Source: Isurus oxyrinchus
Taxonomy: Eukaryota
Direction of reading: 5' to 3'
Assembly: GCA_026770705.1 (NCBI GenBank)
Contig: JANJGN010000052.1
Location: 2,914,001-2,978,000 of the forward strand
Length of the DNA: 64,000 bases
Shown: positions 7,924 through 60,446 of the stretch, in pieces
Layout: the number at the start of each line of letters is the position of its first letter
Numbering within the stretch: position 1 is the stretch's first letter
Position numbers and translations under genes: made by a program
The notes under the pieces: generated by a model
Told to the model about the DNA's origin: nothing
Seen by the model: the letters and a program-made list of their open reading frames with translations, nothing else
Databases searched by the model: none

Positions 7924-8172
7924 TCAGTTTTTCTGGAACCTGATCTGTGTGTATTCCGTGTCCTCGCTCCTGTGCACAGTCCTGTCACCGCCGGGCAGCT
8001 TTGAAAAGTTGATGTTGGCGTAGAAAAGCTCGTCGGGTTTGTCGGGGTTTCCATGTCCAACATCGCCTCCCACTGGACCTTCAGAGAGACCCCGGGGAGC
8101 TGGGGTCTCCCCCTCACTAGTTGTGTCTCTGGTTGTGTTCTGGGGCTCAGTAATCAGCACGTTCTGTTTGCC
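7924..8172 (-). CDS. Gene C terminal exon with ITIM (LFYANI) and ITSM-like motif (TEYTQI)
   Basis: Acceptor tctctgtag, phase 0, 83 codons to TGA. Motifs at 8011-8028 and 7942-7959 parallel the ELHYASL/TEYSEI tail of CD33-related Siglecs. Confidence 0.9.
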   Translation of the reverse strand, partial: GKQNVLITEPQNTTRDTTSEGETPAPRGLSEGPVGGDVGHGNPDKPDELFYANINFSKLPGGDRTVHRSEDTEYTQIRFQKN

Positions 8173-9008
8173 CTACAGAGAAATAGAAACAGAAGACATC
8201 CTCACATCATTTACTGGCACTGATAGGGTTAAGTTATTCTGCAGCCTCGTTACTGTCAGTCATGTCTCAATGGGTTTAATCCTCTTTTTCACTCTCTTTC
8301 TCTGTCTCCTTTTTTTCAATCTCTTTCTCTGTCTCTCTTTCTCTCTCTCTCTCTTGCTTTCTCTCTCTATTTATCATGTAATCTCTCTCGCTATCGCAGA
8401 CCTGAGTCTTGAAGTCCTATGTTACCATCCCAATCATGAGATTTGTGCCCCATTATTCACAAACACAGACACACAAAGAACCTCACGCCAATGAAGGAAT
8501 TTTATTGAAGGGCGACACTGCTACAGTGTTGGAAATGTGGCCATGGGACCAGATAAGATGGTAAACATGGTCAGCATTATACAACTATTCTGAAAGAGGC
8601 ATCTCGAACACTGCAATGTTCTCTCAGTGCTCTCTGCTGACAGTGCAGCACTCCCTCGGAACTGCCCCTTCAAGAGGGCAGCACCCCTTGAAAATGGACT
8701 CTTTGACAGTGCAGCACTCACTCAGTACTGTCCTCAGTACTGACCATCCGACAGTGCAGCACTCCCTCAGTACTGGCCCTCCGACAGTGCAGCACTCCCT
8801 CAGTACTGACCATCCGACAGTCCAGCACTCCCTCAGTACTGACCCTATGACAGCGCAGCACTCCCTCAGTACTGACCCTCTGACAGTCTAGCTCTCCCTC
8901 AGTACAGACCCTCTGACAGTGCAACACTCCCTCAGTACTGACCTTCTGACACTCCAGCACTCCCTCAGCACAGGCCCTAGGACAGTGCAGCACTCCCTCA
9001 CTACTGAC

Positions 9009-9041
9009 ATCTGGTGCCTTGTCATTATTGCGTTCAGGTTT
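9009..9041 (-). CDS. Gene C putative 33-nt cytoplasmic exon KPERNNDKAPD
   Basis: Long pyrimidine tract ending gaccag, phase 0-0, donor GTCAGT at the edge of a minisatellite. Confidence 0.5.
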
Positions 9042-9220
9042 CTGGTCAAAGAGCGAGTGATGGAGGGAAGAGGGGGAGGGAGCGAGAGACAATGCTACCT
9101 ACTGAGCCATATCTGACTCCACAGGTAGATATCTGTGGGTAACCTGGCTGGGAATCTGGGACATGTGTTGTCTACACACTGAGATTGAAGCTTGGGAGTG
9201 AGTGTAAACAGCTCCTGTAC

Positions 9221-9302
9221 CTGGTGCTTCACAGAGAGTGGACTGGGGGTCAATACAATGTCACTGGTCCCTGAAACTCTCTCCTCCATCGCTGTCTTTC
9301 TC
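9221..9302 (-). CDS. Gene C cytoplasmic exon 1 RKTAMEERVSGTSDIVLTPSPLSVKHQ
   Basis: 82 nt, ttgcag|...CAG|gtacag, phase 2-0, matching the TM exon phase. Confidence 0.75.
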
Positions 9303-9839
9303 CTGCAATAACACAATATCACACTGTGGTTATCATATAGCAGAGAGTCAGTGCAGCACAGACACAGAGCCCAGTGTAACCTTACACCAACGAATGGACT
9401 GTCTCTAGTTCCAATAAGGGATATCAGCGTGACATCACTATAATGGAAGTGTGTCATGTGATCCAATCTTAGTTTGACTTTTGCTTTGAGCAGAACACAC
9501 ACTCACAGCTCTGATACCTTCAATCTTTCTCCATATGTATAACTGTTCTCGTGCCGAGTCTTGATAAACAAATCATTAACATTCTCACCCAATCCCTGTG
9601 AGCGATTGGTGCTTTGTTTCTTGTACAATAAATAAGCCTAAGGTATAATATCATTATAATGACATGCCATATCTTTGACCCCCCCTCCACCCCTGCTCTT
9701 CCCCCCATAGCCCTTCAAATGTTCCCCCTTCAAGTATTTATCCAATTCCCCTTTTGAAAGATCCTATTAAATCTGCTTCCAGCGCCCTTTCAGGCAGCAC
9801 CTTCCAGATCACAGCAACTGATTATTATTCATCTGGATA

Positions 9840-10363: not shown

Positions 10364-10460
10364 TTTCTCACACAGATGAAGATGAAGATTCCAGCCAGGA
10401 AAACACTCAACATGATCCCAGCCGTGAACAATCCTACTGTCCATTTACTGGAGTCTCTAC
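10364..10460 (-). CDS. Gene C transmembrane exon RDSSKWTVGLFTAGIMLSVFLAGIFIFICVRK
   Basis: 97 nt, ttttacag|...|gtaagt, phase 1-2, uncharged hydrophobic helix. Confidence 0.9.
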
Positions 10461-11274: not shown

Positions 11275-11556
11275 GTTCCACAGTGATGGTTATGAACCCC
11301 TCCACTGCTCCATGTTCATTCTCTACCACACACTGATAGTCTCCAGTGTCCCTGGATGTAACGTGAGGAATCACCAACCACAGCTCATTGTTGGAACTTG
11401 TTCTGTTCATTGGGACATTAAGATGTCGCCACGTCAGGTTAGAAGCTGGGAAGCTCTCGACAGAGCAGATTATCACTGCAGAATTCCCCTCAATTATATT
11501 GATCGATGAAGCGTTAATCATACCAAGTGAAGTAAATGAGAGATCCTGTGGTGCAT
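11275..11556 (-). CDS. Gene C C2/I-set exon, membrane-proximal copy (intact)
   Basis: 282 nt, tttttag|...|gtgagt, phase 1-1. Confidence 0.88.
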
Positions 11557-12337: not shown

Positions 12338-12618
12338 GTTCCACAGTGATGGTTATGAACCCCTCCACTGCTCCATGTTCATTCTCTGCCACACACTGAT
12401 AGTCTCCAGTGTCCCTGGATGTAACGTGAGGAATCACCAACCACAGCTCATTGTTGGAACTTGTTCTGTTCATTGGGACATTAAGATGTCGCCACATCAG
12501 GTTAGAAGCTGGGAAGCTCTCGACAGAGCAGATTATCACTGCAGAATTCCCCTCAATTATATTGATCGATGAAGCGTTAATCATATCAAGAGAATTAACT
12601 AAGAGATTCTGGGTGCGT
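12338..12618 (-). pseudogene. Gene C C2/I-set exon, middle copy, 1-nt frameshift
   Basis: 281 nt; CCACAG has become CCCAG, giving an in-phase TAG at 12599-12601. Both splice sites are intact. Confidence 0.8.
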
Positions 12619-13368: not shown

Positions 13369-13650
13369 ATTCCACAGTGATGGTGATGAATCCCTCCACT
13401 GCTCCATGTTCATTCTCTACCACACACTGATAGTCTCCAGTGTCCCTGGATGTAACGTGAGGAATCACCAACCACAGCTCATTGTTGGAACTTGTTCTGT
13501 TCATTGGGACATTAAGATGTCGCCACGTCAGGTTAGAAGCTGGGAAGCTCTCGACAGAGCAGATTATCACTGCAGAATTCCCCTCAATTATATTGATCGA
13601 TGAAGCATTAATCATTTCAAGCGAAGTAAATGTGAGATTCTGTGGAGCAT
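13369..13650 (-). CDS. Gene C C2/I-set exon, first tandem copy in transcription order (intact)
   Basis: 282 nt, ttcttag|...|gtgagt, phase 1-1, APQNLTFTSLEMINASS..TITVE. Confidence 0.88.
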
Positions 13651-14387: not shown

Positions 14388-15974
14388 ATGTGTGCATGTG
14401 GATTGTCGCATCTTTATTATTAACGTTATTTAAAAATAGTGATCACACAAGCCTGGCTTCTAAGGAGATGAAACTGCAAACAATTTACAGTATAGTGAAA
14501 TGTACAGGAATAATCTATTTATTTTGAGTTGATGATATATAATTATACATGAGGCATGTTGCTAATTTCAAACATCATCTGAAATATGGCAGGTCTGACA
14601 GAGCAGCATTCGCTCAGTGTCCACCCTCTGACAGTGCAGCACTCCCTCAGCATTGACGCTTTGAGAGTGCAGCACTCCTTCAGTATTGACCCTCTGGAAG
14701 TGCAGCACTCCCTCAGTGTTAACCCTCCAACAGTGCAGCACTCCCTGAGTACTGACCCTCTGACAGTTCAGCACTGCCTCAGTACTGACCCTTTGATAGA
14801 GCAGGGTTTCCCTCAGTACTGACCTCCTGACAGTGCAGCACTCCCTCAGTACTGACCCTCTGACAGTGCAGCACTCCCTCAATATTGACCCTCCAACAGT
14901 GCAGCACTCCCTCAGCACTCCCTCACTGGGGAGAGTCCATCTGGGTTTTGAGCTGAAACCTTGAGACGGTTTGAAAACCCCAACCTGCTGTCTTGGAGAG
15001 AGAGAGAGAGAGAGTGCGTGCGTGTGTGAGAAAGAGAGACAATGTGTGTGTGAGAGAGTGACAGTGCGTATGTGTGCGAGAGAGAAGGATAGAGAGAAAG
15101 AGAAAATGTGTGAGAGAGCAAAAGAGAGGTAGAGTGTGTACGCATGAGAGAGTGAGGTAGCTGAATTGTGTGAGAGAGAGAGTGTGTGTGAGAGAAAGGG
15201 AATGTCTGTGTTAGAGAGAGAGCTTATGTGTGAGAGAGAAAGAAAGAGAGAGAATCTGCGTGTGTTAGATAGTGTGTGTGTGAAAGAGAGAGTGTGTATG
15301 TGAGAGAGCGTGTGCGTGAGAGCGTGTGTGTGTGTGTGTTTGAGAGAGAGGGTGTATGTGTTTGAGAGAAGGAGTGTGCGAGAGAGGGTGTGCGTGTTTG
15401 AGAGGGAGTGTGTGTGTTTAAAAGAATGAACAAGGGAAAATGTGTGTATGTGTGTGTGTGTGTCTGCGTGTGCATTCTGAATGAGCTGAGTTCACAGTTT
15501 CACACGTTGCTAGGGACCACTTTTCCGCCTCTCTGTCAGACTGTGTGTATCTGACAGCAGGTCAGGCAGGAATAGTCCAGAATGCGCTGTGGTTTTGTAG
15601 CATTGAAACAACGACATAAACTAAATGAGTGCTGCACCAAATAAAGACATGGAGTGACCACACCAAAAAACCACGTGACTTCCCCAGTTTCACATCTCCC
15701 TCAAACACAGAAAAACTGGGTTAACACTGACCCTCCTCCCAGAGCCAGTTCACCTCGTGTCCGATGCAGTCAGGAGAGGAAGATCATCTCTCCTCCGATC
15801 CTGCTAAACTGAACATTTCCAGAATTAGATCAGCTCCCTGAAGTGTCTCCAGTTAGACATTCATCTGACAGGATTGACTCTACAACCCTGGGGACTCATT
15901 CTCCTGTAAGTAAAACACTTGCTGCTCCTGTCAAATCTCTTCTGTACAGCATGGTCTCTGGATGTCCCAGAACA

Positions 15975-16225: not shown

Positions 16226-17540
16226 TAATATTGGACTAATCTCCAGGCGAGGTTGGCTGGATGGATTATTGACAAGGTCCATTCACCCTGTAAAGAGTTT
16301 CTCTGGTTTGAAATACCCAATCAAACATCGAGTTCTGTGTCTAAACCTTGTGTTGAAAAGACACCTTTCCAGCTCTTCACCTGCCATTAGCTTGTTGAGT
16401 CTTCACACGCTCCGTCTGTCCGTGACCAACCCCTCTTAGCTCATCCTTTCCTTGTCGTACATCGAGCTGTTCATCCTGATGGGTTCCATCCTTCCCAGTA
16501 ACACTCCATCTCCGACATCAAACTAACTCCCAACACGTTGATGAATTGTATGGATTCCAGCGTCAGTTGGTTCTGTCTGAGGCTGTTTCTCTGATCGGGG
16601 ACCGAGCTGTTCTGAATAGACATTGTGTTCAGCAGTTCTAATTGCAGATCAGACTGTTCAACCAATGCTGCTGTTCACTGAGGTGACTCCGATTCTACAT
16701 TCACACATTAATGATCTCATGTCCAGCAGCAAACATCTGAATGAAGCCAGGTTCAAGAAAAATCCCAGCTGCTTGATCCGACAGTTATCTGTTCAGGCAT
16801 GGCCCCTTGTTCCAAATAACAAACATTATTTAAAAATAGTCATCACATGAGCCTGGTTAACAAGGAAATGAAACCATGAACAATTTGCAGTGAAGTGAAA
16901 CGTACAGGACTAATCTATTTATATTGAGCTGATGATATAGAATGTTACACGAGGCATGTTGCTAATTTCAAACATCATCTGAATTACGACAGTTCTGACA
17001 GTGCAGCACTCCCTCAGTACTGACCCTCCGACAGTGCAGCACTCCCTCAGTACTGACCCTCTGACAGTGCAGCACTCCCTCAGTACTGACCCTCCGACAG
17101 TGCAGCACTCCCTCAGTACTGACCCTCTGACAGTGCAGCACTCCCTCACTACTGACCCTCTGACAGCGCAGCACTACCTCAGTACTGACCCTCTGACAGT
17201 GCAGCACTCCCTCAGTACTGACCCTCTGACAGTGCAGCACACCCTCAGTACTCCCTTACTGGGGAGAATCTGCCTGGGTTTTGAGCAGAAATCATGAGCA
17301 CGTCTTAAAACCACAACCTTCCGTATTAAAGAGAGTGTGTCTGAGAGAGAGAGAGAGCGAGAGAGACAGAGAGAGTCTGTGAGAGAGAAAAAGAATTAGA
17401 NNNNNNNNNNNNNNNNNNNNNNNNNNNNNNNNNNNNNNNNNNNNNNNNNNNNNNNNNNNNNNNNNNNNNNNNNNNNNNNNNNNNNNNNNNNNNNNNNNNN
17501 NNNNNNNNNNNNNNNNNNNNNNNNNNNNNNNNNNNNNNNN

Positions 17541-20035: not shown

Positions 20036-20066
20036 ATGTCCAGTCCCCTCCCTTGTTGCCTTTCAG

Positions 20067-20353
20067 GAGTGACGTCAGAGGGATGGTCTATGAAGGCGCT
20101 GCCTCGGAGGGCCATCAGCAGCTCTTGTGTGGTTATTCCGTGTAGCTTTGACTTTCCTTCCCACTCTTACACAGCACTGCACGGAGCTTGGTATAAATAT
20201 TGGTATAGATGGAAATATACCATCACATACACCAAAGATCCCAATTATGGGATGGCCACATTCGTGGGACGTGCTAAAATAATCGGCGACTTGGAAGGGA
20301 AGAATTGTTCAGTGAGGATTGACAGTCTCAGAGCTGAAGACAGTGACGTGTAT
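20067..20353 (+). pseudogene. Gene D Siglec/MAG-like V-set exon truncated in the F strand
   Basis: Acceptor tttcag, phase 1; W..SSCVVIPCSFDFP..HGAWY..GRAKIIGDLEGKNCSVRIDSLRAEDSDVY, then retrotransposon sequence and a stop. Confidence 0.85.
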
Positions 20354-21485: not shown

Positions 21486-21739
21486 GAAGAATTGAAGCAT
21501 CCTCACAGGCTGCAAGTGTCCCTCAGGTCAGAGTTGGTTCCACTGGAAAATCCTGAAGAGAAAGAAAGCGAATTCTGTGCCGCTCTGAGCAAACTGAAGA
21601 AACAGTTGGCAGGGAAGACCCAACCATGTCCAATGTTCCAGGAGGAAGGCAAGAGATACAAGGAAGAGACTGAAGAGCTGAAGATTCAGCTGAATGAAAC
21701 CAAAGAGGCAGTTACAGTATCACAACAAGTTTACAGTGC

Positions 21740-34448: not shown

Positions 34449-34588
34449 TCAAACAGTCTGTCGACTTCCTTTCACTGTTTGTCTCTCCCAGACACAGACT
34501 CCAGCGATAGTGATAACCACAGCCACAAGGAATATCACAGCTCGTATTCCCAGGATCAGGATCACGTGCAGAATCTCTCCTCCACTGT
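34449..34588 (-). CDS. Activating-type TM exon SGGEILHVILILGIRAVIFLVAVVITIAGVCVWERQTVKGSRQTV* (gene B)
   Basis: Acceptor gttctctag, phase 1, long hydrophobic run with one Arg (CGA 34542-34544), 12-residue tail, TGA at 34449-34451, probable donor gtcagt after 34427. Confidence 0.82.
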
Positions 34589-36251: not shown

Positions 36252-36404
36252 ATTCCACAGTAATGGTTATGAACCCCTCCACTGCTCCATGTTCATTCTC
36301 TGCCACACACTGATAGTCGCCAGTGTCCCTGGATGTAACGTGAGGAATCACCAACCACAGCTCATTGTTGGAACTTGTTCTGTTCATTGGGACATTAAGA
36401 TGTC
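36252..36404 (-). pseudogene. Gene B 3' half of the domain-3 C2 exon; 5' half and whole domain-2 exon missing
   Basis: Matches the other domain-3 copies from RHLNVPMNRT to TITVE with a GTGAGT donor; homology stops abruptly at about 36404. Confidence 0.88.
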
Positions 36405-36927: not shown

Positions 36928-37301
36928 CAGAAACGTCAAGCTGGGTTACAGGATACTAGCTGTAACTATTCCTGCTGTCAAACTCTATTCTGAAAAAATA
37001 AGGTCCTGCATCTTCCCGTCTGATGTTGTTTATAATCAGGGAACAGTCGCCATCTTTCAGGTCTCCAGACAGCCGGGTCCGATGGCGGAATCTTTGATCC
37101 CTGTGACTGTGACCCTCGGAGTGAAAGGCTATAGACCATTTAGGCTGTGGGTTCCCATCTATTCCTTTCAACCAGATTCCGCACGTGATCTCCCTACGAA
37201 ATTTGATAAGTAACTGGAATGACATGGAATCGGTACACATGAACCTTCCTGTGCTGTCACCTCTCGTGGAGTGTCACCTTTCCACTCTTGTGACAGTCCA
37301 A
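36928..37301 (-). pseudogene. Gene B Siglec V-set exon, disrupted
   Basis: 374 nt (not a multiple of 3). Frameshift near 37180-37195 splits GSCVPIPC from GDCSL..YFFRIEF, and there is a TAG stop at 36956-36958. Splice sites are intact. Confidence 0.9.
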
Positions 37302-38004: not shown

Positions 38005-38083
38005 CTTGGAGAAGTGACAAGAGGAAGTAGACTTCCCGATCATTGTCCACTCCCAGATATTCCATCCACTTCTCACTCTCAAG
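38005..38083 (-). pseudogene. Gene B leader exon with a 1-nt deletion relative to gene A
   Basis: ATG at 38043 to donor is 39 nt, versus 40 nt in gene A. An upstream ATG at 38065 gives in-phase MEYLGVDNDREVYFLLSLLQ. Confidence 0.8.
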
Positions 38084-40926: not shown

Positions 40927-41043
40927 TTATAAATTCCCATAAACAGAATCCTCAGCAAATTCACAGTTTGCGTAAAGATCATCATCTGTATCAGGATTGA
41001 CTCCGCGGTTAGATTTCATTTCCAGATCCTTCACATCTTTCTT
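40927..41043 (-). CDS. Gene A terminal coding exon KKDVKDLEMKSNRGVNPDTDDDLYANCEFAEDSVYGNL*
   Basis: Acceptor tttctattacag, phase 0, 39 codons ending in TAA, two tyrosine motifs in an acidic context. Confidence 0.8.
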   Translation of the reverse strand, partial: KKDVKDLEMKSNRGVNPDTDDDLYANCEFAEDSVYGNL

Positions 41044-42143: not shown

Positions 42144-42275
42144 GTTGGGTGTGAGTTTGGTTGGGTTTGGGAGTGACTGTATAAAACATTGCAGATACAG
42201 GACTGGAGCAGCCATATCAATAACCAGGCTACTGGAGCAGCTGAGAGGCTGGGGATCCTGTGGTGTGTGACTCAC

Positions 42276-42380
42276 CTGATTCCTCAAAGCCCAACCACGC
42301 TCACAGTTTTCATAAACAGGACCTCGATATTCATCAACATGATGGTTCGATTTGATTCCTGCTTTCCCCTCGCCTCTCTT
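42276..42380 (-). CDS. Gene A cytoplasmic exon, KRGEGKAGIKSNHHVDEYRGPVYENCE..; frame and 3' end ambiguous
   Basis: Strong acceptor ctctgttacag. The phase-0 translation aligns with the terminal exon (K..KSN...YxNCE). Two candidate donors: GTGAGC (exon end 42305) and GTGAGT (exon end 42276). Confidence 0.65.
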
Positions 42381-42727: not shown

Positions 42728-43120
42728 AGAAAGATGTTCTGTACAACAGACTTGAGCCTCACACCCAGATCTCAATAATCAGTAGAAATCTTTCAAAGGC
42801 ATCAATCATTGGAATCTGTCTTTATTAAGTCACAACACTAACAAAGGACGGTGTTGATGGTGGAAGTGAATTCCAATCGTTCCGTTACTTACCCAGTACC
42901 TGTCCGACTGCTCGCCTGGGGAGGAACTGCCCACACGCTCTGCTTGGGCTGAATGACCTCTTCCTGTGCTGCTCCCTCTGTGTATTTAATGAGAAAGGGT
43001 GGATGTGTCACTGTGAATCAAATCAGGAATTGGGGAACAATTGTGAAAACCCTTTCACTGAAATGTAGGGCCTTAGTGTTGTGTTGTAAGCAAACTGTTA
43101 ACCCTTTGTGTCCTGACTCT
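42728..43120 (-). repeat. Extra copy of the promoter/first-exon block inside gene A (exon end 42893)
   Basis: Near-identical to 38330-38700 and 60280-60640. Confidence 0.85.
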
Positions 43121-43735: not shown

Positions 43736-43832
43736 TTTCTCACACACTTGAAGATGAAGAATCCACTCAGTCCAACACTCAAACAGATTCCAGCTCCAAG
43801 CAATCCTGCTTTCCATTCATTGGAATCTCGCC
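43736..43832 (-). CDS. Gene A transmembrane exon RDSNEWKAGLLGAGICLSVGLSGFFIFKCVRK
   Basis: 97 nt, ttttacag|...|gtaagt, phase 1-2. Same length as, and homologous to, the TM exon at 10364-10460. Confidence 0.88.
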
Positions 43833-45060: not shown

Positions 45061-45098
45061 GCTAACAACAAGAGAACGTTCAATTCTGTGTAACTCAT

Positions 45099-45380
45099 GT
45101 TCCACAGTGATGGTTATGAACCCCTCCACTGCTCCATGTTCATTCTCTGCCACACACTGATAGTCTCCAGTGTCCCTGGATGTAAGGTGAGGAATCACCA
45201 ACCACAGCTCATTGTTGGAACTTGTTCTGTTCATTGGGACATTAAGATGTCGCCACGTCAGGTTAGAAGCTGGGAAGCTCTCGACAGAGCAGATTATCAC
45301 TGCAGAATTCCCCTCAATTATATTGATCGATGAAGCGTTAATCATATCAAGAGAATTAATTGAGAGATTCTGTGGTGTGT
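45099..45380 (-). CDS. Gene A domain-3 C2/I-set Ig exon with mutated splice donor
   Basis: 282 nt open frame (IICSVESFPASNLTW..DTGDYQCVAENEHG). Acceptor ttttcag is intact, but the donor reads ATGAGT where paralogous copies read GTGAGT. Confidence 0.8.
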
Positions 45381-47090: not shown

Positions 47091-47514
47091 ATAGTGAGGT
47101 AGTGCAGCACTGTCAAAGGGTCAGTACTGAGGGAGTGCTGCATGTGGGAGGGTCAGTACTGAGGGAGTGCTGCACTGTGGGAGGGACAGTACTGAGTGAG
47201 TGCTGCATGTGGGAGGGTCAGTACTGAGGGAGTGCTGCACTGTGGGAGGGTCAGTACTGAGTGAGTGCTGCATGTGGGAGGGTCAGTACTGAGGGAATGC
47301 TGCATGTGGGAGGGTCAGTACTGATGGAGTGGTGCACTGTCAGAGGGTCAGTACTGAGGGAGTGCTGCACTGTCGGAGGGTCAGTACTGAGGGAGTGCTG
47401 CACTGTCGGAGGGTCAGTAATTAGGGAGCTCTGCACTGCCAGAGTGTCAGTACTGAGGGTGTTCTGCACTGTTGGAGGGTCAGTAATTAGGGAGATCTGC
47501 ACTGTCGGAGGGTG

Positions 47515-48400
47515 ATAAGACCATAAGACCACAGGACGTCAGAGCAGAAGGAGGCCATTCGGCCAATCAACTCTGCTCCGCCATTCAATGACACCATGGC
47601 TGATCTGACAATCCTCAACTCCACTTTCCTGCCTCTTCCCCATAGCCTTTGATTCCCTGACTGATTAAAAAACTGTGTATCTCAGCCTTGAATATAATTA
47701 ATGACCCAGCCTCTGCAGCTCTCTGTAGTAAATAATTCCACACATTCACTACCCTCTGAGGGAAGAAACTCCTCATCTCTGTCTTAAATGGGTGACCCCT
47801 TACTCTGAGATTATGCCCTCTGGTCCTAGACTCTCCCACAAGGGGAAACAACCTCTCAGCATCTACCCTGTCAAGCACCCTAAGAATCTTATATGTTTCA
47901 ATAAGGTCAGCTCTCATTCTCCTAAACTCCAATGAGTACAGGCCCATCCTACTCAACCTCTCCTCATATGAAAATCCCTCATTACTGGGATCAACCTAGT
48001 GAACCTTCTCTGGACTGCCTCCAATGCCAGTACATCTTTCCTTAGATAAGGGAACCAAAACTGTTCACAGTATTCTAGGTGTGGTCTAACTAGTGCCTTG
48101 TATAGTTTTAGCAAGGCTTCCCTATTTTTATACTCCATTCCCTTTGAAATAAAGGTCAGCATTCCAAATACTATGTGCATTTAAGTAAAGAGCCATTAAT
48201 TTTGTCTTTTTATCATTTCCCCCCCTCTGACACTATTTGCTGATGTATTTTTATGTTTGGACACTGTGTCCCTTCCTGTCACACACTGGGTATCATTGCC
48301 AAAAAGCTATCCTGCAATGCTGACAAATCCTTTTGGTTTGTAACTGTACATATACCCTCTCCAGAAACATTCGCCCCACACTCTATTTAGTTTAAAGCCA
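47515..48400 (-). mobile_element. Second internally deleted CR1 copy
   Basis: Same deletion junction as 46204-47090. Confidence 0.9.
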
Positions 48401-49019
48401 ATAGTGAGGTAGTGCAGCACTGTCAAAGGGTCAGTACTGAGGGAGTGCTGCATGTGGGAGGGTCAGTACTGAGGGAGTGCTGCACTGTGGGAGGGACAGT
48501 ACTGAGTGAGTGCTGCATGTGGGAGGGTCAGTACTGAGGGAGTGCTGCACTGTGGGAGGGTCAGTACTGAGTGAGTGCTGCATGTGGGAGGGTCAGTACT
48601 GAGGGAATGCTGCATGTGGGAGGGTCAGTACTGAGGGAGTGCTGCACTGTGGGAGGGTCAGTACTGAGGGAGTGCTGCATGTGGGAGGGTCAGTACTGAG
48701 GGAGTGCTGCACTGTTGGAGGGTCAGTACTAGGGGAGTGTTGCACTGCTGGAGGGCCAGTACTGGAAGAGTGCTGCACTCTCGGAGGGTCAGTACTTAGG
48801 GAATGCTGCACTGTCGGAGGGTCAGTACTGAGGGAGTGCTGCATTGTCGGAGGGTCAGTAATTAGGGAGCTCTGCACTGTTGGAGGGTCAGTACTGAGGG
48901 AGTGCTGCACTGTTGGAGGGTCAATACTTAGGGAATGCTGCACTGCCAGAGGGTCAGTACTGAGGGAGTGCTGCACTGTTGGAGGGTCAGTAATTAGGGA
49001 GATCTGCACTGTCGGAGGG

Positions 49020-52000: not shown

Positions 52001-52075
52001 TGACAAATCCTTTTGCTTTGTAAGCCTACATATACCCTCTCCAGAACACTCTCCCCATCTATTTGGTTTAAGGCA
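49020..52075 (-). mobile_element. CR1 LINE, nearly full ORF2 (APE endonuclease + RT), frameshifted
   Basis: NAHSIWN..DLIAIMETWL (endonuclease), WKTANVTPIFKKG..NYRPVSLTS, VIYLDFQK, DDTK; short tandem repeat (TCTTATGG) at the 3' end. Confidence 0.93.
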
Positions 52076-53162
52076 ATACTGAGGGAGAGCAGCACTGTCA
52101 AAGGGTCATTACTGAGGGAGTGTTGCACAGTTGGAAGCTCTGGAACAAGGGACTGCAGCATTATCTGAGGGTCAGTCGGGAGGGAGGTATTCAATGTTGG
52201 ATTGCAAGTTCTGAGGGAGCGCTGCAGAGTTGGAGGTTCAGTAGTGAAGGAGTGCTGCACTGTCAGAGGGTCAGTACTGAGGGAGTGCTACACTGTCAGA
52301 GGGTCAGTACTGAGGGAGTGCTGCACTGTTGGAGGGTCAGTACTGTGGGAGTGCTGCAGTGACGGAGGATCAGTACGGAGAGATTTCTAAACTGTTGGAG
52401 GATCAGTACTGAGGGAGTGCTGCACTGTCAGAGGGTCAGTACTGAGGGAGTGCTGCACTGTCAGAGGGTCAGTACTGAGGGAGTGCTGCACTGTCAGAGG
52501 CTCAGTACTGAGAGAGTGTTGCACTATCAGAGGGACAGGACTGAGGGAGTGCTGCACTGTCAGAGGGACAGGACTGAGGGAGTGCTGCACTGTTAGAGGG
52601 TCAGTACTGAGGGAGTGCTGCACTGTCAGAGGGTCAGTACTGAGGGAGTGCTGCACTGTCGAAGGGTCAGTTCTGAGGGAGTGCTGCACTGTCAGAGGGT
52701 CAGTACTGAGGGAGTGCTGCACTGTCGCAGGGTCATTATTGAGGGAGTGCTGCGATGTCGGAGGATCAGTACTGAGGGAGTGCTGCACGATCAGGGGGTA
52801 AGTACTGAGGGAGTGCTACACTGTTGGAGGTTCAGTACTGAGTGAGTGCTGCACTGTTGGAGGGTCAGTACTAAGGGAGTGCTGCACTGTCAGAGGGTCA
52901 GTACTGAAGGAGTGCTGCACTGTCGGACAGTCAGTACTGAGGGAGTGCTGCACTGTCAGAGGATCAGAACTGAGGGAGTGCTGCACTGTCAGAGAGTCAG
53001 TACTGAGGCAGTGCTGCACTGTCAGAGGGTCAGTATTGAGGGAGTGCTGCACTGTTGGAGGGTCAATACTTAGGGAATGCTGCACTGCCAGAGGGTCAGT
53101 ACTGAGGGAGTTCTGCACTGTTGGAGGGTCAGTAATTAGGGAGATCTGCACTGTCGGAGGGT

Positions 53163-56100
53163 GATAAGACCATAAGACCACAGGACGTCAGAGCAGAAGG
53201 AGGCCATTCGGCCAATCAACTCTGCTCCGCCATTCAATGACACCATGGCTGATCTGACAATCCTCAACTCCACTTTCCTGCCTCTTCCCCATAGCCTTTG
53301 ATTCCCTGACTGATTAAAAAACTGTGTATCTCAGCCTTGAATATAATTAATGACCCAGCCTCTGCAGCTCTCTGTAGTAAATAATTCCACACATTCACTA
53401 CCCTCTGAGAGAAGAAACTCCTCATCTCTGTCTTAAATGGGTGACCCCTTACTCTGAGATTATGCCCTCTGGTCCTAGACTCTCCCACAAGGGGAAACAA
53501 CCTCTCAGCATCTACCCTGTCAAGCGCCCTAAGAATCTTATATGTTTCAATAAGGTCAGCTCTCATTCTCCTAAACTCCAATGAGTACAGGCCCATCCTA
53601 CTCAACCTCTCCTCATATGAAAATCCCTCCATTACTGGGATCAACCTAGTGAACCTTCTCTGGACTGCCTCCAATGCCAGTACATCTTTCCTTAGATAAG
53701 GGAACCAAAACTGCTCACAGTATTCTAGGTGTGGTCTAACTAGTGCCTTGTATAGTTTTAGCAAGGCTTCCCTATTTTTATACTCCATTCCTTTTGAAAT
53801 AAAGGCCAACATTCCACCTGCCTTCCCTATTAACTGTTGAACTTGTATGTTATCTTTCTGATGACCCCCAAATTCCTCTATGCTTCACCTTTCCAATGTC
53901 TTTCTCCATTGAAATAATATTCAGCTCCTCTATACATCCTGCCACAGTGCAGCAGCTCACATTTTCCCACATTATATTCCATCTGCCAAGTTGATGCCCA
54001 CTCACTGAACCTGTCTATGTCTCTCTGTAGACTCTTTGTGACACCCTCACCACTTGCCTTCCCATCTATTTTTGTGTCATCCACAAACTTGGCGAAAGTA
54101 CATTAATTTCCCTCATCCAAGTCATTAATTATATTTTGTAAATAATTGTGGCCCCAGCACTGATCCCTGTGGCACTCCACAGGTTGCCATCTTGAAAATG
54201 CCCCCCTTATCCCAACTCTCTGACTTCTATTAGTTAGCCGATCCTCTATCCATGCTAATATACTGCCCCCAACACCATGGGCTCTTATCTTATTAAGTAG
54301 CCTTATATGTGGTACTTTACTGAACAACTTTTGGAAATCCAAATATATTACATCTACTGGTTCCCCTTTATCTATCCTGTTTGTTACCTCCTCAAAGAAT
54401 TCTAATAAATTTGTCATGCATGATTTCACCTTCATGAAGCCTGTGTGTGATTAAATTATGCATTTCTAAATAGTCTGCTATTACATCCTTTATAATGGAC
54501 TCTAACATGTTCCCAATGACAGATGTTAAGCTAACTGGCCTATAGTTACCTGTTTGTTGTCTCCCTCCCTTTTTGAATATGGGTGTTACATTGGCAGTTT
54601 TCCAATCCTCTGGGAGTTTCCCAGAATCTAAGGATTCTTGGAAGATTAAAACCAGTACATCCACTATCTCTGCATCTACTTCCTTTAATATCCTAAGATG
54701 CAACCTATCAGGTCCAGGGGACCTATCAGCCTTGAGACCCATTAATTTCGCTAGCATTATTCTCTAGTGATAGTTACTGTATTTATTTCCTCTCCCCACC
54801 CCCCTTTTGCCCCTTGATTATTTAGTATTTTTGGAATGATATTAGTGTGTTCTACCGTGAAGACTGATGCAAAGTATTTATTCAACTCCTCTGTCATTTC
54901 CTGGTTCCTCATTATTATTTCCCCAGCCTAGTTCTCTAAGGGGCCCATGTTCACTTTGGTCTCTCTCTCCCTTTTTATATATTTAAAGAAGCTTTTATTG
55001 TCCTTTTTTATATCAATTACTAGTTTACCTAGTTTTCTCCCTCTTTATTTATTTTTTGGTCATCTTCTGTTGGTTTTTAAATCTCTCTCAATCCTCTGGC
55101 TTACCACTAATCTTTGTCGTGTTGCATGTTTTTTCTTTCAATTTGACACACACCTTAACTTCTTTGGGTAACCCAGGTTGGTTTATTCTCTTCCTACAAT
55201 CCTTCTTCCTCACTGGGATATATCTTTGTTGTGAGTCATGAGCTATTTTCTTTAACATCTGCTTTGTTCATCCAGCATCTTTTCTGCTAAACCCCTTTCC
55301 CAGTCCACTCCAGACAACCCTGTCCTTATTCCTTTGTCATTACACTTATTTAAGTCCAGCACAGTTGTTTCCGACCCAGGTTTCTCAGTCTCAAACGGAA
55401 TGCTAAATTCTACCATGTTATGGTCACTGTTTTCCAGGGGATCATTTATTCTGAGATCATGTATGAAACCTGCCTCATTACACATTACCAGATCCAAAAT
55501 AGCCTGATCCCTGGTTAGATCCACGACATATTATTCCAGGAAACTGTCTTGAATACACTCTATGAATTCTTGCTCATGGCTACCTCTGCCAATTGGGTTT
55601 TCCCAATCTACATGAAGATTAATGTACTGCCTTTTTTACATGCCCTCATTATCTCATGATTTATTCTCTGTCCTACAGCCGAGCTACAGTCATGGGGCTG
55701 ATAGACCACTCCCACCAGTTCCTTGTTCCCCTTGTTATTCATTACCTCGAGCCATATGGATTCTATACCCTCCGATCCAAGATCATTTCTTGCTTTCATA
55801 CTTATTCCGTCTCCTATTAACAAAGCTACCCCACCACCTTTCCTTCCTGCCTGTCTTTTTGAAAAGTCACATACCCCTGAATATTTATTTCAAAGCTTTG
55901 ATCTCCTTGTAACCATGTCTCCATAATGGCTATAAGATCAAACACATTAACCTCTATTTGTGCCATTAATTCATTTATTTTGTTCCAAATACTATGTGCA
56001 TTTAAGCCAAGAGCCATTAATTTTGTATTTTTATCATTTTCCTCCCTCTGACACTATTTGCTGATGTATTTTAATGTTTGGAAACTGTGTACCCACCTGT

Positions 56101-56895: not shown

Positions 56896-57192
56896 ATTGC
56901 ACAGTCAGTACGAGGGTCTGCTCCGATGAAACAGATGGATATCTCACTCTGCAGCTGAAAGTGTGTCCGTGGTGTTTGAGTGATGGGATCAGGGTCAGAA
57001 CAGAAGTATAGGTCAGAGTGACACCATGCTGAGTTACAGTGTTTGAGACTGATCCAGGTACGTCAGTGGGAGTGTCCCAGGTTAAGACAGGTGCTGCTGT
57101 TCCATTGCACGTTGTGTTGATGGTGCAGCTTACATCCACACGCTTTCCTGCAATAATTTCAGCAGGGAATATCGTGGGTTTATCTGTGAAAT
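56896..57192 (-). CDS. Gene A domain-2 C2-set Ig exon
   Basis: 297 nt, phase 1-1, ttag|...|gtaagt. DFTDKPTIFP..VSCTINTTCNGTAAPVLTW..TSVLTLIPSLKHHGHTFSCRV has the extra Cys and layout of Siglec domain 2. Confidence 0.92.
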
Positions 57193-58051
57193 CTAACACA
57201 CAGAGAATGGATCCTTTTAGAGAAATATAACGTGAAGCATTAGTTCAAATAGAAATCACAATCCCACAAGAGAAAGCACTTTTACAAGGATGATATCAGA
57301 ACTGAGAGGTTACAATGATCAGGAAAGATTTTCTTGCTCTTTGGCAGTAGTGTTTCTGTCTCTCAGCTTAATACACGTTCACTCTGAGACATGTGAATTG
57401 AGAACACTGGATGAGAGAAGAGGCTCAGACCAGAGATTGGAGTTAAAAGCAGAATACTGCGGATGCTGGAAATCTGAAACCAAAACAAAAATTGCTGGAA
57501 AGACTCAGCAGGTCTGACAGTATCAGTGGAGAGGAAGACAGGGTTAACGTTTCGAGTCCGTATGACTCTTCATCAGACCAGAGGTTTGAGTTCACTGGCT
57601 TCTCATTTCCTCATTGATCTGGGTGATTTATCACCTTGTTGTTTGTTGGATCTTGCTGTGCACAAACTGCCTGCTGTGTTTAACATCTGTGACTACAATT
57701 CAGGAATAATTTCATTGGCTGTGAAGGGATTTGGATCCTCCTGAGGTGGTAAATTGCGCTGCAGAAATGCACATCTTTCTTTTATCGATACGTCAGACTT
57801 TTAAACAGGACATGAGAGATTGATGGGAATGGATAACCTGATAATACAGTTAATGCTTTTCATCATTGATATTAAAGTGAATATTAGAGGTTGCTTTAGG
57901 ACTGAACCGGAAGCTATCACCAGGTTATTGAGAATCAGACAGTGTGTTATATTAAGCTGTGTTTTGTGTTAATATGTAAACGTCACAGTTTGTGTTATTT
58001 CCCATTGAGTGTTGAATGTGAATTGTTGAGTAATTATAACACAGCACTTAC

Positions 58052-58420
58052 CAGAAACCTGAAGCTGGGTTACAGGGTAATAGTTATGGCTCGGACCATT
58101 GTCAAATTCTTTCCTGAAAAAATAAGGTCCTGCATCTTCCCGTCTGATGCTGTTTGTAAGCAGGGAACAGTCGCCATCTTTCAAGTCTCCAGACAGCCGG
58201 GTCCGATGGTGGAACCGTGGTAACTCATGACTGTGATCCTTGGCGTGAAAGGCTATGGGAGCCCAGGGAATCTGTTCCTCATTATTAAACCAGACTCCAC
58301 CTCGCGGTTGGCTTTCCAAATGTGATGGATAACTGTAATGACATGGAATCTGTACACACGAACCTTCCTGCGCTGTCACCTCTCGGGGACTGTCACCTTT
58401 CCACTCTTGTGACTGTCCAA
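58052..58420 (-). CDS. Gene A Siglec V-set Ig exon (intact, essential Arg present)
   Basis: 369 nt, phase 1-1, ccccag|...|gtaagt. Contains GSCVQIPC, GDCSL and DAGPYFFR: the Siglec B/E-strand cysteines and the F-strand Arg (AGG at 58113-58115). Confidence 0.93.
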
Positions 58421-59955
58421 CTGGGGAGAGAAATATCAATATTTAACTCTGGAAAGTTTGTAGATCCACTAGACTCGATATCCACCCCCTCCATCACTGG
58501 GGCACAGTGGCTGCAGTGTGGAACATCTACAGGACACACAAGGAACTCCCCAAGGTTTCACAATGGATGGAAGAGAATCCTGGACACAGGAGTGGACAAG
58601 GTCATTCTACATTGGCTCACGGTCCTCAGGACCCTGTTTAGTGAAGCCAGTGAGACAGTGTCACTGTGCCTTGTATTATAATGCTCCTGTGTAGCCCCTT
58701 GGATTGTTTTTTTTTACAGTTAAGGCGCTATGTAAATATAATCTATTGCTCTCTGCTCATCTGGACCATTTGGATTGTTAATTTCAAGCGGCCTGGTGAC
58801 AGCTTCATGTTCAGTCCAAATGCAGCCTCTAATTATCACTTTAATGTCAATGATTAAATGTGACCCAACACACTGTCCACAAGACACACGAACTGAGATC
58901 CATTCAGTGCTGATTTACAAGACAGGACAATGGATTAGGAGCCCTCAGAACTCCCCCCATTATCACCGTCATGAATCACTAATTAGCCTAACATTCCTGT
59001 CTGCTCTTCAACACAGCTGATTGGCTAATCTGATTCAATCTGATTGGTGCACTTTGGACCTTCATTGTCTGAGGAATCTCTTTGGATCCTCATTGTTTTA
59101 GGAATATCTTTGGATCCTCATTGTTTAAGGAATCTCTTTGGATCCTCATTGTCTAAGGGATTATTTCTGATCCAAACCCCATATTGTTGTATTGTTGATT
59201 CCGATGCAGCATTGTAGACTGACTTGTCCCCAAGCTCAGCACTGACCCTACTCCAGCAGACACTGTGAAACACACTAACAAAGCGCCTCTAGCCTGAGCT
59301 CTGCATGTGTCGAGAGAAAGACAAATATACAAACTGTATATTGACCCATTTACACACGGACAGCTTTACCTTCCTTCTCTCTTTCAGTTATCTTGCTCCC
59401 TTATTGAAGTATCTAGCAAGGTGAGAATGGACAGGAAGTGTGACACTGAACAACCTGTCTATTCTAGGAGCTGCTGTGTTGTCTTCATGGGAAATCCTGA
59501 CTAAAATCAGCAAAAGACACATTTCAGGATATTGCTATCAGACACCTAACATAGGGAGAGACTTCATCCTCCAGTTTTTATCCCTGATTTTCTACTCAAC
59601 CTTTTACCACCCTTCCCCCCATCCACACTGACTTACATAGGCTCCCAGTCAAGCAGTGCCTCCATTTTAAGATTCTCATGCTCAATTCCCAATCCCCCCA
59701 ACCCCCTCTCCAGTCCCGACCTCTGTAACCTCATCCAGCCCCTTCACCCCTCTGAGATCTCTGCTCTCCTCCAATTCTGCTGTCAGACAGGGAGTCAGTG
59801 TATATCAGTGAGCACAGGGGTGATGGGTCAATGGGACTTGGTATGAGTTTGTACACTGGCTCACTGCTGAATCAGTTCGACAGTCACAGCTTAATAAGAA
59901 TGATCTTTTACAAAACTATTAATCATAAATCTGTCTGAGCTGACGATGGTATTAC

Positions 59956-59995
59956 CTTGGAGAAGTGACAGGAGGAAGTAAGATTTCCCGATCAT
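59956..59995 (-). CDS. Gene A signal-peptide exon, MIGKSYFLLSLLQ (exon 59956-60037)
   Basis: Pyrimidine-rich CAG acceptor, ATG at 59995, 40 coding nt, phase-1 donor CAAG|gtaata. Hydrophobic leader continues into the V exon. Confidence 0.85.
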
Positions 59996-60446
59996 TGTCC
60001 ACTCCCAGATATTTCCTCAGCTTCTAACTCTGAAGTTCTGAAAGAGAAAGGAGTTAATGAGACCTCACCTCTTGTCCGACAGCTCTCGAGAGATCAGAAC
60101 TGCTTTTAGACAATGTCTTCACGGATCTAATTTGATTCTCTGTGGGATGATAGGTGCTCTGCAGAGAGTTACAAGGCTTTAAGAAAGAAAAACATTGAAG
60201 GACTTGCATTTCTATAGCACCTTTCACCACCTCAGGATATCCCAAAGCTCATGTCCCTGCACTTCCCTCATCCCTTGAGCTAGAAAGATGTTCTGTACAA
60301 CAGACTTGAGCCTCACACCCAGATCTCAATAATTAGTAGAAATCTTTCAAAGACATCAATCATTGGAATCTGTCTTTATAAAGTCACAACATCAACATAG
60401 GACGGTGTTGGTCGTGGAAGTGAATTCCAATCGTTCCGTTACTTAC

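What the first reader, a model, noticed from the sequence alone, without database searches (positions are those of the whole stretch)
7924..60037. Three-way Siglec receptor system: inhibitory, activating and YxN/ITAM-like tails attached to near-identical Ig exons
Seen: three different membrane/cytoplasmic modules on the same strand, each downstream of a copy of the same domain-3 Ig exon. (C) neutral TM + LFYANI/TEYTQI; (B) Arg-containing TM + 12-aa tyrosine-free tail; (A) neutral TM + VYENC/LYANC/VYGNL. Most of these exons are absent from the ORF track or appear in the wrong frame. Established: mammalian paired Siglecs (5/14, 11/16) combine near-identical ectodomains with ITIM versus charged-TM signalling. 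Inference: this is an independently expanded paired-receptor Siglec cluster in a cartilaginous fish, with a third signalling class. I cannot verify whether it has been described.
Basis: partly seen in the sequence, partly recalled or inferred. Interest (0 to 1): 0.9.

Follow-up and report, generated by a model that had tools for sequence, protein, structure and literature searches.

The report
Shark Siglec genes with three tails
This stretch of a shark genome holds Siglec-type immune receptor genes whose near-identical outer parts are joined to an inhibitory tail, an activating membrane anchor or a third tyrosine-rich tail. Only the third kind is a complete, expressed gene here, and gene databases already list the family, although I found no paper on it.

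Summary
On the minus strand, three different membrane/cytoplasmic cassettes each lie downstream of a 95-99% identical Ig "D3" exon, and every motif is at the stated place.

The V domain is a true Siglec V-set. All 18 best solved-structure matches are Siglecs, and the sialic-acid arginine (YFFR) is aligned.

The closest proteins are RefSeq models from great white and basking shark, named Siglec-12/13, CD33-like or MAG-like. Each of the three tails occurs on such models, and the window's V is 88-90% identical to V domains of Arg-anchor models.

Contigs from four studies, taken as RNA, carry the junction D3 to membrane exon. One run also shows cyt0 to c1 and c1 to c2.

The window itself is not an intact three-way system:
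- **Gene B** (Arg anchor) is a pseudogene.
- **Gene C** (ITIM tail) has no leader, V or C2 here, and one of its three D3 exons is frameshifted.

The assembly gap lies in simple repeats and touches no exon.

The third tail ends in YxNC-x7-YxN[V/I/L]-COOH and is conserved in sharks and rays. It is new for Siglecs but resembles CEACAM ITAM-like/YxN tails.

The scan has already found this family elsewhere in this genome.

The parts
59956..59995 (-). Gene A leader exon (MIGKSYFLLSLLQ, ends in phase 1)
   Evidence: ATG and donor GTAATA read; coordinates.
58052..58420 (-). Gene A V-set exon (369 nt) with the Siglec YFFR arginine and the three-Cys pattern
   Evidence: Pfam V-set and Ig_CD22. The 18 best PDB matches are all Siglecs, E 5e-14 to 7e-7, with the Arg aligned. 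88-90% identical to great white shark Arg-anchor models.
56896..57192 (-). Gene A C2-set exon (297 nt), the only C2 exon in the window
   Evidence: Pfam C2-set_2, 1.6e-9. No second copy by tblastn. 91-97% identical to lamniform models.
45099..45380 (-). Gene A D3 Ig exon (282 nt); the donor reads AT instead of GT
   Evidence: Junction 45099|43832 in contigs of 4 runs from 4 studies.
43736..43832 (-). Gene A membrane exon with no charged residue in the span (97 nt, phase 1 in, phase 2 out)
   Evidence: Contigs with 1 mismatch over the whole exon (records 13 and 20). 100% identical to great white shark P0251.
42893..42977 (-).
   Evidence: Matches shark models P0015, P0245 and P0158. A loose end at 42381 reads the end of cyt0 joined to c1.
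42276..42380 (-). Gene A cytoplasmic exon c1 (VYENC)
   Evidence: Whole exon in spliced contigs of X5 (1131 nt) and X7. 97% identical to P0245.
40927..41043 (-). Gene A last coding exon c2 (LYANC-x7-VYGNL, then stop)
   Evidence: The loose end at 42276 reads the start of c2. 87% identical to P0245.
38005..38065 (-). Gene B leader exon, intact through an upstream ATG
36928..37301 (-). Gene B V exon, disabled: 374 nt against 369 nt in gene A (frameshift near 37181) and a TAG stop near its end
36252..36402 (-). Gene B D3 remnant: 3' half only, no acceptor
34449..34588 (-). Arg-in-membrane exon with a 12-aa tyrosine-free tail and stop (cassette B); intact open frame and acceptor
   Evidence: 96% identical to the C-termini of great white shark Siglec-12 models P0164 and P0167.
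13369..13650 (-). Gene C D3 exon, copy 1 (282 nt, intact)
12338..12618 (-). Gene C D3 exon, copy 2 (281 nt; a 1-bp deletion gives TAG if entered in phase 1)
11275..11556 (-). Gene C D3 exon, copy 3 (282 nt, intact)
10364..10460 (-). Gene C membrane exon with no charged residue in the span (97 nt)
   Evidence: 90-97% identical to lamniform ITIM-type models.
9221..9302 (-). Gene C cytoplasmic exon (RKTAMEERVSGTSDIVLTPSPLSVKHQ)
   Evidence: The same segment is in P0002 and P0012.
7924..8172 (-). Gene C last coding exon with an ITIM (LFYANI) and an ITIM-like motif (TEYTQI), then stop
   Evidence: 84% identical to P0002 and P0195. Aligns with the C-termini of tree-shrew CD33 and a turtle Siglec-like protein.
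20066..20353 (+). Inverted remnant of a second V-set lineage, cut off after DSDVY, followed by retroelement-like ORFs
   Evidence: 93.75% identical to the V of great white shark P0245.
17401..17540 (.). Assembly gap inside GA/GT simple repeats; no exon adjoins it

Best explanation
The window is a piece of a large, elasmobranch-specific expansion of CD33-related-type Siglec genes. The genes are assembled from interchangeable exon cassettes: leader, V-set, C2-set, zero to several near-identical D3 Ig exons, and then one of three membrane/cytoplasmic cassettes.

- **Cassette C**: an uncharged membrane span plus an ITIM and an ITIM-like motif in the same order and terminal position as in amniote CD33-related Siglecs. 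Inferred function: recruits SHP-type phosphatases and inhibits.
- **Cassette B**: an arginine in the membrane span and a 12-residue tail. Inferred function: pairs with an acidic ITAM adaptor chain of the DAP12 or FcR-gamma kind and activates.
- **Cassette A**: an uncharged membrane span plus three cytoplasmic exons that end in YxNC-x7-YxN[L/V/I]-COOH, with a further YxN upstream. Inferred function: once phosphorylated by Src-family kinases, the pYxN sites bind Grb2-family SH2 domains, and the ITAM-like 11-residue Tyr-Tyr spacing may also admit Syk-family tandem SH2 domains.

In this window only gene A (cassette A) is a complete gene, and contigs taken as RNA show it spliced. The cassette B unit is a pseudogene. 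The cassette C unit lacks its 5' exons here.

Shown: the exon anatomy, Siglec membership of the V domain, the junctions of tail A, and the presence of all three tails on shark gene models. Inferred: sialic acid binding, the adaptor partner, and the sign of signalling of each tail.
For: - **Anatomy and phases:**
- **Siglec V domain:** (Pfam V-set and Ig_CD22; Siglec-5, MAG, Siglec-7, Siglec-8, CD33, Siglec-10, sialoadhesin, Siglec-15; YFFR aligned).
- **Family:** one search found 878 relatives. Every relative I looked up within the elasmobranch clade of the V tree was a shark or ray. NCBI names them Siglec, CD33-like or MAG-like.
- **All three tails on gene models:**. I counted 22 A-type models. 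By the species names they come from about 14 species of sharks and rays.
- **Same architecture in another species:** basking shark P0158 is colinear with gene A, exon by exon.
- **Splice junctions:** 45099|43832 in 4 runs from 4 studies; the cyt0-to-c1 and c1-to-c2 joins as loose ends in run X1; whole-exon spliced contigs.
- **Paired pattern:** the window's V_A groups with great white shark Arg-anchor V domains at 88-90% identity (SH-aLRT 92), and tail classes interleave in the tree.
- **D3 exons:** 95-99% identical, while the membrane exons are 75% identical or unrelated.
- **Tail C:** aligns with amniote CD33-type C-termini.
- **Pseudogene lesions:**
Against: - No ligand or signalling data exist. 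Calling the tails inhibitory or activating rests on motif analogy.
- The runs are only guessed to be RNA and are contigs, so expression level, strand and tissue are unknown. They may also come from a sister species or from paralogues, because the likeness threshold was 90%.
- Gene A's D3 donor reads AT in this assembly, so this allele may splice poorly.
- No junction from C2_A to D3_A (an 11.5-kb intron) was examined.
- One contig joins TM_A directly to c1. That shifts the frame and removes all the tyrosines.
- The lesions of gene B and of D3_C2 could be assembly errors.
- The first Tyr motif of tail A has Cys, not Leu or Ile, at +3, so it is not a canonical ITAM.
Confidence: 0.78

Rival explanations
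1. All three units in this window are working genes, forming an intact three-way paired system. On this view the frameshifts, the stop codon, the AT donor and the missing exons are assembly or consensus errors, or are hidden in the gap.
For: - The membrane and tail exons of B and C are intact with good splice sites.
- A gap lies upstream of gene C.
- Contigs use the D3_A|TM_A junction despite the AT donor in the assembly.
- Intact B-type and C-type models exist in the closest species.
Against: - Gene B has several independent defects: V is 374 nt against 369 nt, it carries a TAG, no C2 exon exists, and D3 has lost its 5' half and acceptor. Together these are hard to blame on base-calling.
- No third leader or promoter copy exists in the window.
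- No V or C2 lies on the minus strand between 13.7 and 34.4 kb.
Confidence: 0.1
2. Tail A is not a third, activating class. Its pYxN sites act as in CD22, where Grb2 binding helps to dampen signalling, or they act as endocytosis or sorting signals. Functionally the system would then stay two-way.
For: - CD22 carries a Grb2-binding YxN site within an inhibitory tail (PMC5302901, found).
- The first motif is not a canonical ITAM half.
- For CEACAM ITAM-like tails the authors left open whether they give internalisation or activation signals (PMC2832619).
Against: - Tail A has no ITIM or ITSM.
- The Tyr-Tyr spacing of 11 and the acidic residues before both tyrosines are kept in most of the 22 models from sharks and rays, as in ITAM-like tails of CEACAM3-type receptors.
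- Tail A sits on V domains close to those of both B-type and C-type genes.
Confidence: 0.3
3. The B and C cassettes are alternative 3' ends of one long transcription unit that starts at leader A or leader B, rather than separate genes.
For: - All exons lie on one strand in compatible phases.
- Gene C has no 5' exons of its own.
Against: - Gene A ends in a terminal exon whose 3' UTR is at least 830 nt in a spliced contig.
- Leader and promoter duplicates mark separate units.
- About 20 kb of transposon-rich DNA and an inverted V remnant separate B from C.
- Related species have separate gene models for each tail.
Confidence: 0.05
4. These proteins belong to the Siglec family by descent but do not bind sialic acid. 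They recognise another ligand instead, as arginine-mutated Siglecs do.
For: - The G-strand residues differ from mammalian CD33-related Siglecs (alignment).
- A sister ectodomain lineage that carries the same tail lacks the arginine: YYFYV in P0245.
- V_A and V_B differ most in one stretch of the V exon, which I take to be a loop.
Against: - V_A keeps YFFR, aligned with the essential Arg of Siglec-5.
- It also keeps the Siglec Cys pattern in V and C2.
Confidence: 0.2

Closest known systems
Mammalian CD33-related Siglecs, including the paired receptors Siglec-5/14 and Siglec-11/16
   Same: - V-set domain with the F-strand arginine, followed by C2-type domains.
- Tail with a membrane-proximal ITIM and a distal TEYxxI-type motif at the C-terminus.
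- Activating partners have a basic residue in the membrane span and a short tail.
- Very similar ectodomains are shared between partners in one cluster (PMC2832619 discussion).
   Different: - The shark genes form a separate clade in the V tree.
- The number of D3 exons varies from 0 to 4 or more.
- A third cassette carries an intrinsic YxN/ITAM-like tail, which I know of in no mammalian CD33-related Siglec (from my own knowledge and the reviews read).
- In this window the activating unit is a pseudogene.
CEACAM1-related paired receptors: CEACAM1 (ITIM/ITSM), CEACAM3-type ITAM-like tails, and marsupial and CEACAM20 tails with ITAM plus YxN
   Same: - Three kinds of tail on near-identical Ig ectodomains.
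- Tails are encoded by a membrane exon plus several short cytoplasmic exons.
- An ITAM-like motif is combined with a Grb2-type YxN motif (PMC2832619; PMC5112662).
   Different: - The ligand-binding domain belongs to a different family (CEACAM N domain, not a Siglec V-set).
- No sequence similarity between tail A and CEACAM tails was shown here; two searches found only shark relatives or nothing.
- Both C-terminal shark motifs carry Asn at +2, and the first carries Cys at +3.
CD22 (Siglec-2)
   Same: A Siglec whose tail has a Grb2-binding YxN site besides other tyrosine motifs (PMC5302901). Pfam Ig_CD22 matches the V domain.
   Different: CD22 has ITIMs and is inhibitory, has seven Ig domains, and matches V_A far less well than CD33-type Siglecs do (E 5e-4 against 5e-14).
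RefSeq gene models of great white shark and basking shark
   Same: - P0158 has the same exon order as gene A.
- P0245 has a tail 87-97% identical to tail A.
- P0164 and P0167 carry the Arg cassette at 96% identity.
- P0195 and P0002 carry the ITIM exon at 84% identity.
   Different: These are automatic predictions with borrowed mammalian names. I found no paper that describes them. The window's species was not identified.

Membership tests
Siglec family (I-type lectins) | N-terminal V-set Ig domain related to known Siglec V domains | tested here: met
   the 18 best solved-structure matches are all Siglecs (E 5e-14 to 7e-7). Pfam V-set and Ig_CD22 above cut-off.
Siglec family (I-type lectins) | Conserved F-strand arginine that binds the sialic acid carboxylate | tested here: met
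   the window's GPYFFRKE aligns with GSYFFRVE of Siglec-5. V_B also keeps it.
Siglec family (I-type lectins) | Three cysteines in V (intrasheet pair plus one for an interdomain bond) and an extra cysteine in the first C2 domain | tested here: met
   Read from the exon translations: V has C-x4-C and a later DCS; C2 has C-x5-C and a later SCRV. The bonds themselves are not shown.
Siglec family (I-type lectins) | Binding of sialylated glycans | not testable with these tools
   Needs recombinant protein and glycan binding assays.
CD33-related Siglec subgroup | Cytoplasmic ITIM followed by a distal ITIM-like motif at the C-terminus | tested here: met
   LFYANI and TEYTQI in the last exon of gene C. 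The exon aligns with the C-termini of tree-shrew CD33 (E 0.001) and a turtle homologue (E 0.002).
CD33-related Siglec subgroup | Orthology with, or nesting within, tetrapod CD33-related Siglecs | tested here: inconclusive
   quick tree: the elasmobranch clade (SH-aLRT 89) is sister to a weakly supported group (81) of amniote CD33-type, bowfin CD33-like and sevengill shark MAG/SMP-like V domains. Human reference Siglecs and synteny were not included.
Paired activating/inhibitory receptors | Highly similar ectodomains on genes with opposite signalling modules in one cluster | tested here: met
   D3 exons are 95-99% identical upstream of three different cassettes. V_A is 88-90% identical to V domains of great white shark Arg-anchor models and 84% to an ITIM model. 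Within this window only one unit is intact.
Paired activating/inhibitory receptors | Activating member with a basic residue in the membrane span and a short tail that associates with an ITAM adaptor | tested here: inconclusive
   The exon has the Arg and a 12-aa tail, but its gene is a pseudogene here. Adaptor association cannot be tested with these tools.
Canonical ITAM (D/ExxYxxL/I-x6-8-YxxL/I) | Leu or Ile at +3 of both tyrosines, with 6-8 residues between the motifs | tested here: not met
   Tail A reads DDLYANC-EFAEDSV-YGNL. The spacing (7) and the second motif fit, but the first has Cys at +3; so do most of the 22 models. It is ITAM-like, not a canonical ITAM.
Grb2-type SH2 docking site (pYxN) | Asn at +2 of a cytoplasmic tyrosine | tested here: met
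   YEN, YAN and YGN in exons c1 and c2; conserved in most shark and ray models. Phosphorylation and binding were not tested.

The most novel reading that the evidence does not exclude
Elasmobranch Siglecs carry a third, self-contained signalling module. This is a C-terminal double YxN motif with ITAM spacing (YxNC-x7-YxN[V/I/L]-COOH), conserved since before sharks and rays split. It is moved as an exon cassette between at least two ectodomain lineages, one with and one without the sialic acid arginine. It would couple Siglec engagement directly to Grb2- and/or Syk-family signalling without an adaptor chain. That would give one lectin family three signalling outputs, and the module would be missing from mammalian Siglecs.
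Probability: 0.3. Interest if true: 0.7.

Novelty: new variant of a known kind. Interest (0 to 1): 0.5.

Why it matters
Reviews describe CD33-related Siglecs mainly in mammals and treat only Siglec-1, -2, -4 and -15 as ancient (PMC9630641, PMC13358205).

A large shark and ray expansion with the same ITIM/ITIM-like tail, with Arg-anchor partners, and with a conserved intrinsic YxN/ITAM-like tail has three consequences:
- It would place paired Siglec signalling at the base of jawed vertebrates.
- It would show that sialic-acid sensing evolved decoy-type and counterbalancing receptors more than once.
- It would offer a natural three-output receptor set for testing how tail cassettes are shuffled among Ig receptors.

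A 2019 review of cartilaginous fish immunity does not mention Siglecs, ITIMs or paired receptors.

The value of this particular window is limited. Two of its three units are defective, and the family is already in RefSeq and in other windows of this scan.

Tried and rejected
- My first exon ends for TM_A and TM_C were one base too long. They made the 9302 exon look out of frame and hid exon cyt0. Shark models and the donor GTAAGT corrected this.
- I first took the leader of gene B to be broken by a 1-bp deletion. An upstream ATG at 38065 keeps it in frame, so I withdrew this.
- A word-based search with tail A found only lamniform and houndshark relatives. The protein atlas gave no usable hit. 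Pfam has no family for any tail or membrane exon. No link to CEACAM or other tails could therefore be shown by sequence.
- Paper searches for shark, elasmobranch or cartilaginous fish Siglecs and for DAP12 or FcR-gamma in cartilaginous fish found nothing specific. The 2018 Siglec evolution review by Bornhofft et al. is not in the library and was not read.
- No V or C2 exon for gene C was found with shark ITIM-type models as tblastn queries.
- The species was not identified. Run names are coded, and the best DNA holders share only about half of the sampled words.
- The exons were searched and translated one by one.

Full report
**Observation**

Reading the DNA and fixing exon ends by pattern search gives three units.

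Gene A:
- leader 59995-59956
- V 58420-58052
- C2 57192-56896
- D3 45380-45099
- membrane exon 43832-43736
- cyt0 42977-42893
- c1 42380-42276 (VYENC)
- c2 41043-40927 (LYANC-x7-VYGNL, then stop)

Gene B:
- leader 38065-38005
- V 37301-36928
- a 3' half of D3 at 36402-36252
- a terminal exon 34588-34449, with an arginine in the membrane span followed by ERQTVKGSRQTV and a stop

Gene C:
- three tandem D3 exons (13650-13369, 12618-12338, 11556-11275)
- membrane exon 10460-10364
- a short cytoplasmic exon 9302-9221
- the last exon 8172-7924 (LFYANI, TEYTQI)

All Ig exons are in phase 1-1, and all three membrane exons accept phase 1. The D3 copies are 94.7-98.7% identical in DNA. TM_A and TM_C are 75% identical, and TM_B is unrelated to both.

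Both TM_A and TM_C end in phase 2 (donor GTAAGT), so tail A needs cyt0, and tail C includes the 9302 exon.

**The assembly gap**

The gap at 17401-17540 lies between GA/GT-rich simple repeats on both sides. The nearest exons are 2.5 and 3.7 kb away, so no reading frame crosses it. It lies upstream of gene C and could hide sequence. I put nothing into it.

**What the domains are**

- The V exon of gene A scores above cut-off for Pfam V-set and Ig_CD22. C2 is C2-set_2. D3 is Ig_3/I-set.
- Against all solved structures, the 18 best matches are Siglecs: Siglec-5, MAG, Siglec-7, Siglec-8, CD33, Siglec-10, sialoadhesin and Siglec-15. E-values run from 5e-14 to 7e-7.
- GPYFFRKE aligns on GSYFFRVE of Siglec-5, which places the arginine that binds sialic acid.
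- The cysteine pattern of V and C2 is the Siglec one.

Family membership is therefore well supported. Ligand binding was not tested.

**Relatives**

A full HMMER scan of 1.84 billion representative proteins found 878 relatives.

- Every relative I looked up within the elasmobranch clade of the V tree came from a shark or ray. NCBI names them Siglec-7/8/10/12/13/14, CD33-like or MAG-like.
- The nearest relatives outside the elasmobranchs that I looked up are bowfin CD33-like and Siglec-14-like proteins.
- Exon by exon, the window is closest to great white shark and basking shark models. Identities are V 86-90%, C2 95-97%, D3 95-97%, TM_A 100%, c1 97%, c2 87%, TM_B 96%, TM_C 97% and the ITIM exon 84%.
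- The genome is therefore most likely from a lamniform shark. The species itself was not identified.

**Are the tails joined to Siglec Ig domains?**

In gene models, yes, for all three tails.

- Basking shark P0158 (463 aa) is colinear with gene A from V to c2.
- Great white shark P0164 and P0167 are V-C2 followed by the Arg cassette.
- P0012/P0151, P0195 and P0002 carry the ITIM cassette, including the short middle exon.
- In great white shark, an A-type and an ITIM-type gene have neighbouring accession numbers on one contig.

For tail A there is also read evidence. I laid contigs of four runs from four studies on 42230-45480. The runs are only guessed to be RNA, but they behave as spliced.

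- All four carry the junction 45099|43832 (D3 to membrane exon).
- Whole-exon contigs cover TM_A with one mismatch.
- Loose ends in run X1 read the end of cyt0 joined to c1, and the start of c2 joined to c1.
- One 1131-nt contig runs from c1 about 950 nt downstream.
- Run X1 also holds D3-to-D3 joints, which means transcripts with tandem D3 exons exist.
- One X1 contig joins TM_A directly to c1. That shifts the frame and gives a tyrosine-free tail.

These are contigs. They say nothing about expression level, tissue or strand, and they could come from a sister species.

**State of the three units in this window**

Gene A is complete. Its one blemish is that the D3 donor reads AT instead of GT, although the same junction is used in the contigs. 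This is unexplained. It could be an allele, an assembly error or rare AT-AG splicing.

Gene B is a pseudogene:
- Its V exon is 374 nt against 369 nt in gene A, which gives a frameshift.
- It has a TAG stop near its end.
- No C2 exon exists.
- D3 has lost its 5' half and acceptor.
- Its leader is intact through an upstream ATG, and its Arg exon is intact.

Gene C is incomplete:
- It has no leader, V or C2 on the minus strand between 13.7 and 34.4 kb.
- Its second D3 exon has a 1-bp deletion that gives a stop in phase 1.

The window thus shows the three cassettes side by side, but not three working genes.

**Evolution**

In a quick maximum-likelihood tree of V domains (62 rows), the 45 elasmobranch rows form one clade (SH-aLRT 89). 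Its sister is a weakly supported group of amniote CD33-type, bowfin CD33-like and sevengill shark MAG/SMP-like V domains.

Within the elasmobranch clade the three tail classes interleave. The window's V_A sits with great white shark Arg-anchor V domains (SH-aLRT 92). That is the pattern of paired receptors kept alike by exchange of ectodomain exons, and it fits a lineage-specific expansion.

The ITIM exon aligns with the C-termini of tree-shrew CD33 and a turtle homologue, with the same motif order and end position. This suggests the inhibitory tail itself is old.

Copies of the cyt0 exon lie just upstream of leaders A and B (60539-60447 and 38586-38494). They mark the duplication unit.

**The third tail**

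- I counted 22 gene models with this tail. By the species names they come from about 14 species of sharks and rays. Most end in [I/L/V]Y[A/E]NC-x7-Y[G/A]N[V/I/L]-COOH; the great white and basking shark models P0015 and P0153 end in YKSC-x7-YVN[V/L].
- The Tyr-Tyr distance of 11 and the acidic residues before each tyrosine are ITAM-like. The first motif has Cys, not Leu or Ile, at +3, so the canonical ITAM definition is not met.
- All three tyrosines in gene A are YxN, the Grb2-family SH2 consensus.
- The same tail, with D3 exons, also sits on a second ectodomain lineage in great white shark (P0245). That V lacks the arginine (YYFYV). An inverted, truncated copy of that V lies in this window at 20066-20353. 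The tail is therefore a mobile cassette.
- The nearest described parallel is the CEACAM family, where ITIM, ITAM-like and ITAM-plus-YxN tails sit on near-identical N domains (PMC2832619, PMC5112662). CD22 also has a Grb2 site, but within an inhibitory tail (PMC5302901).
- Whether tail A activates, inhibits or drives uptake cannot be read from sequence.

**Novelty**

The genes are in RefSeq under borrowed names. I found no paper on shark or ray CD33-type Siglecs, paired Siglecs or this tail. A broad 2019 review of fish immunity does not mention Siglecs or ITIMs.

The scan has already noted this family many times in this genome: 194 notes match "Siglec". Follow-ups on other pieces reached the paired-receptor reading and described the Arg cassette. 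Two unchecked notes describe the YxN tail elsewhere.

I rate it a new variant of a known kind. It is of moderate interest, and this window adds splice evidence for the third tail.

**Limits**

- One reads call of 3,251 letters was used.
- The junction C2_A to D3_A, and all of genes B and C, were not examined in reads.

Noticed in passing
45097-45098 (minus strand donor of D3_A): The intron after the D3 exon of gene A begins with AT, where every other D3 copy has GT. Contigs of four runs still carry the exact exon junction 45099|43832.
   Followed up: partly
12338-12618: The middle of the three tandem D3 exons of gene C is 281 nt. A 1-bp deletion 8 nt into the exon gives a TAG if the exon is entered in phase 1.
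   Followed up: yes
20066-20353 (+ strand), with retroelement-like ORFs from about 20319 to 22200: This is an inverted V-set exon of a second lineage. It is 31% identical to V_A and 93.75% identical to the V of great white shark P0245. It is cut off after DSDVY and is followed by retroelement-like ORFs (zinc-knuckle motif). P0245 has YYFYV where Siglecs have YFFR, yet it carries the A-type tail.
   Followed up: partly
60447-60539 and 38494-38586 (minus strand): Copies of the cyt0 cytoplasmic exon lie just upstream of the promoter and leader of genes A and B. In addition, 60500-60282 is 96% identical to 42946-42728. These are footprints of the tandem duplication unit.
   Followed up: partly
43736|42380 and about 43010 (minus strand): One contig (run X1) joins the membrane exon of gene A directly to c1 and skips cyt0. 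The frameshift gives a 32-aa tail without tyrosine. Another contig (run X6) extends cyt0 upstream to about 43010, where this window has an in-frame TAA.
   Followed up: partly
41110-42230: About 1.1 kb of a roughly 21-bp tandem repeat (about 50 copies) fills most of the intron between exons c1 and c2 of gene A.
   Followed up: no
46300-55530 (minus strand): The 11.5-kb intron between C2_A and D3_A holds repeated reverse-transcriptase ORFs. Two of them are near-identical tandem copies (49960-51382 and 54103-55524), separated by arrays of a 33-bp satellite.
   Followed up: no
many places, e.g. 738-1100, 8600-9010, 14594-14915, 16994-17252, 45510-46220, 52070-53180, 60815-61270, 62210-63910: A 33-bp satellite (consensus unit given) occurs in arrays on both strands throughout the window. 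It produces long spurious ORFs.
   Followed up: no
1335-1474, 2562-2696, 2713-2873, 3770-4017: Four further N runs lie outside the finding, among TG/CA-rich simple repeats.
   Followed up: no
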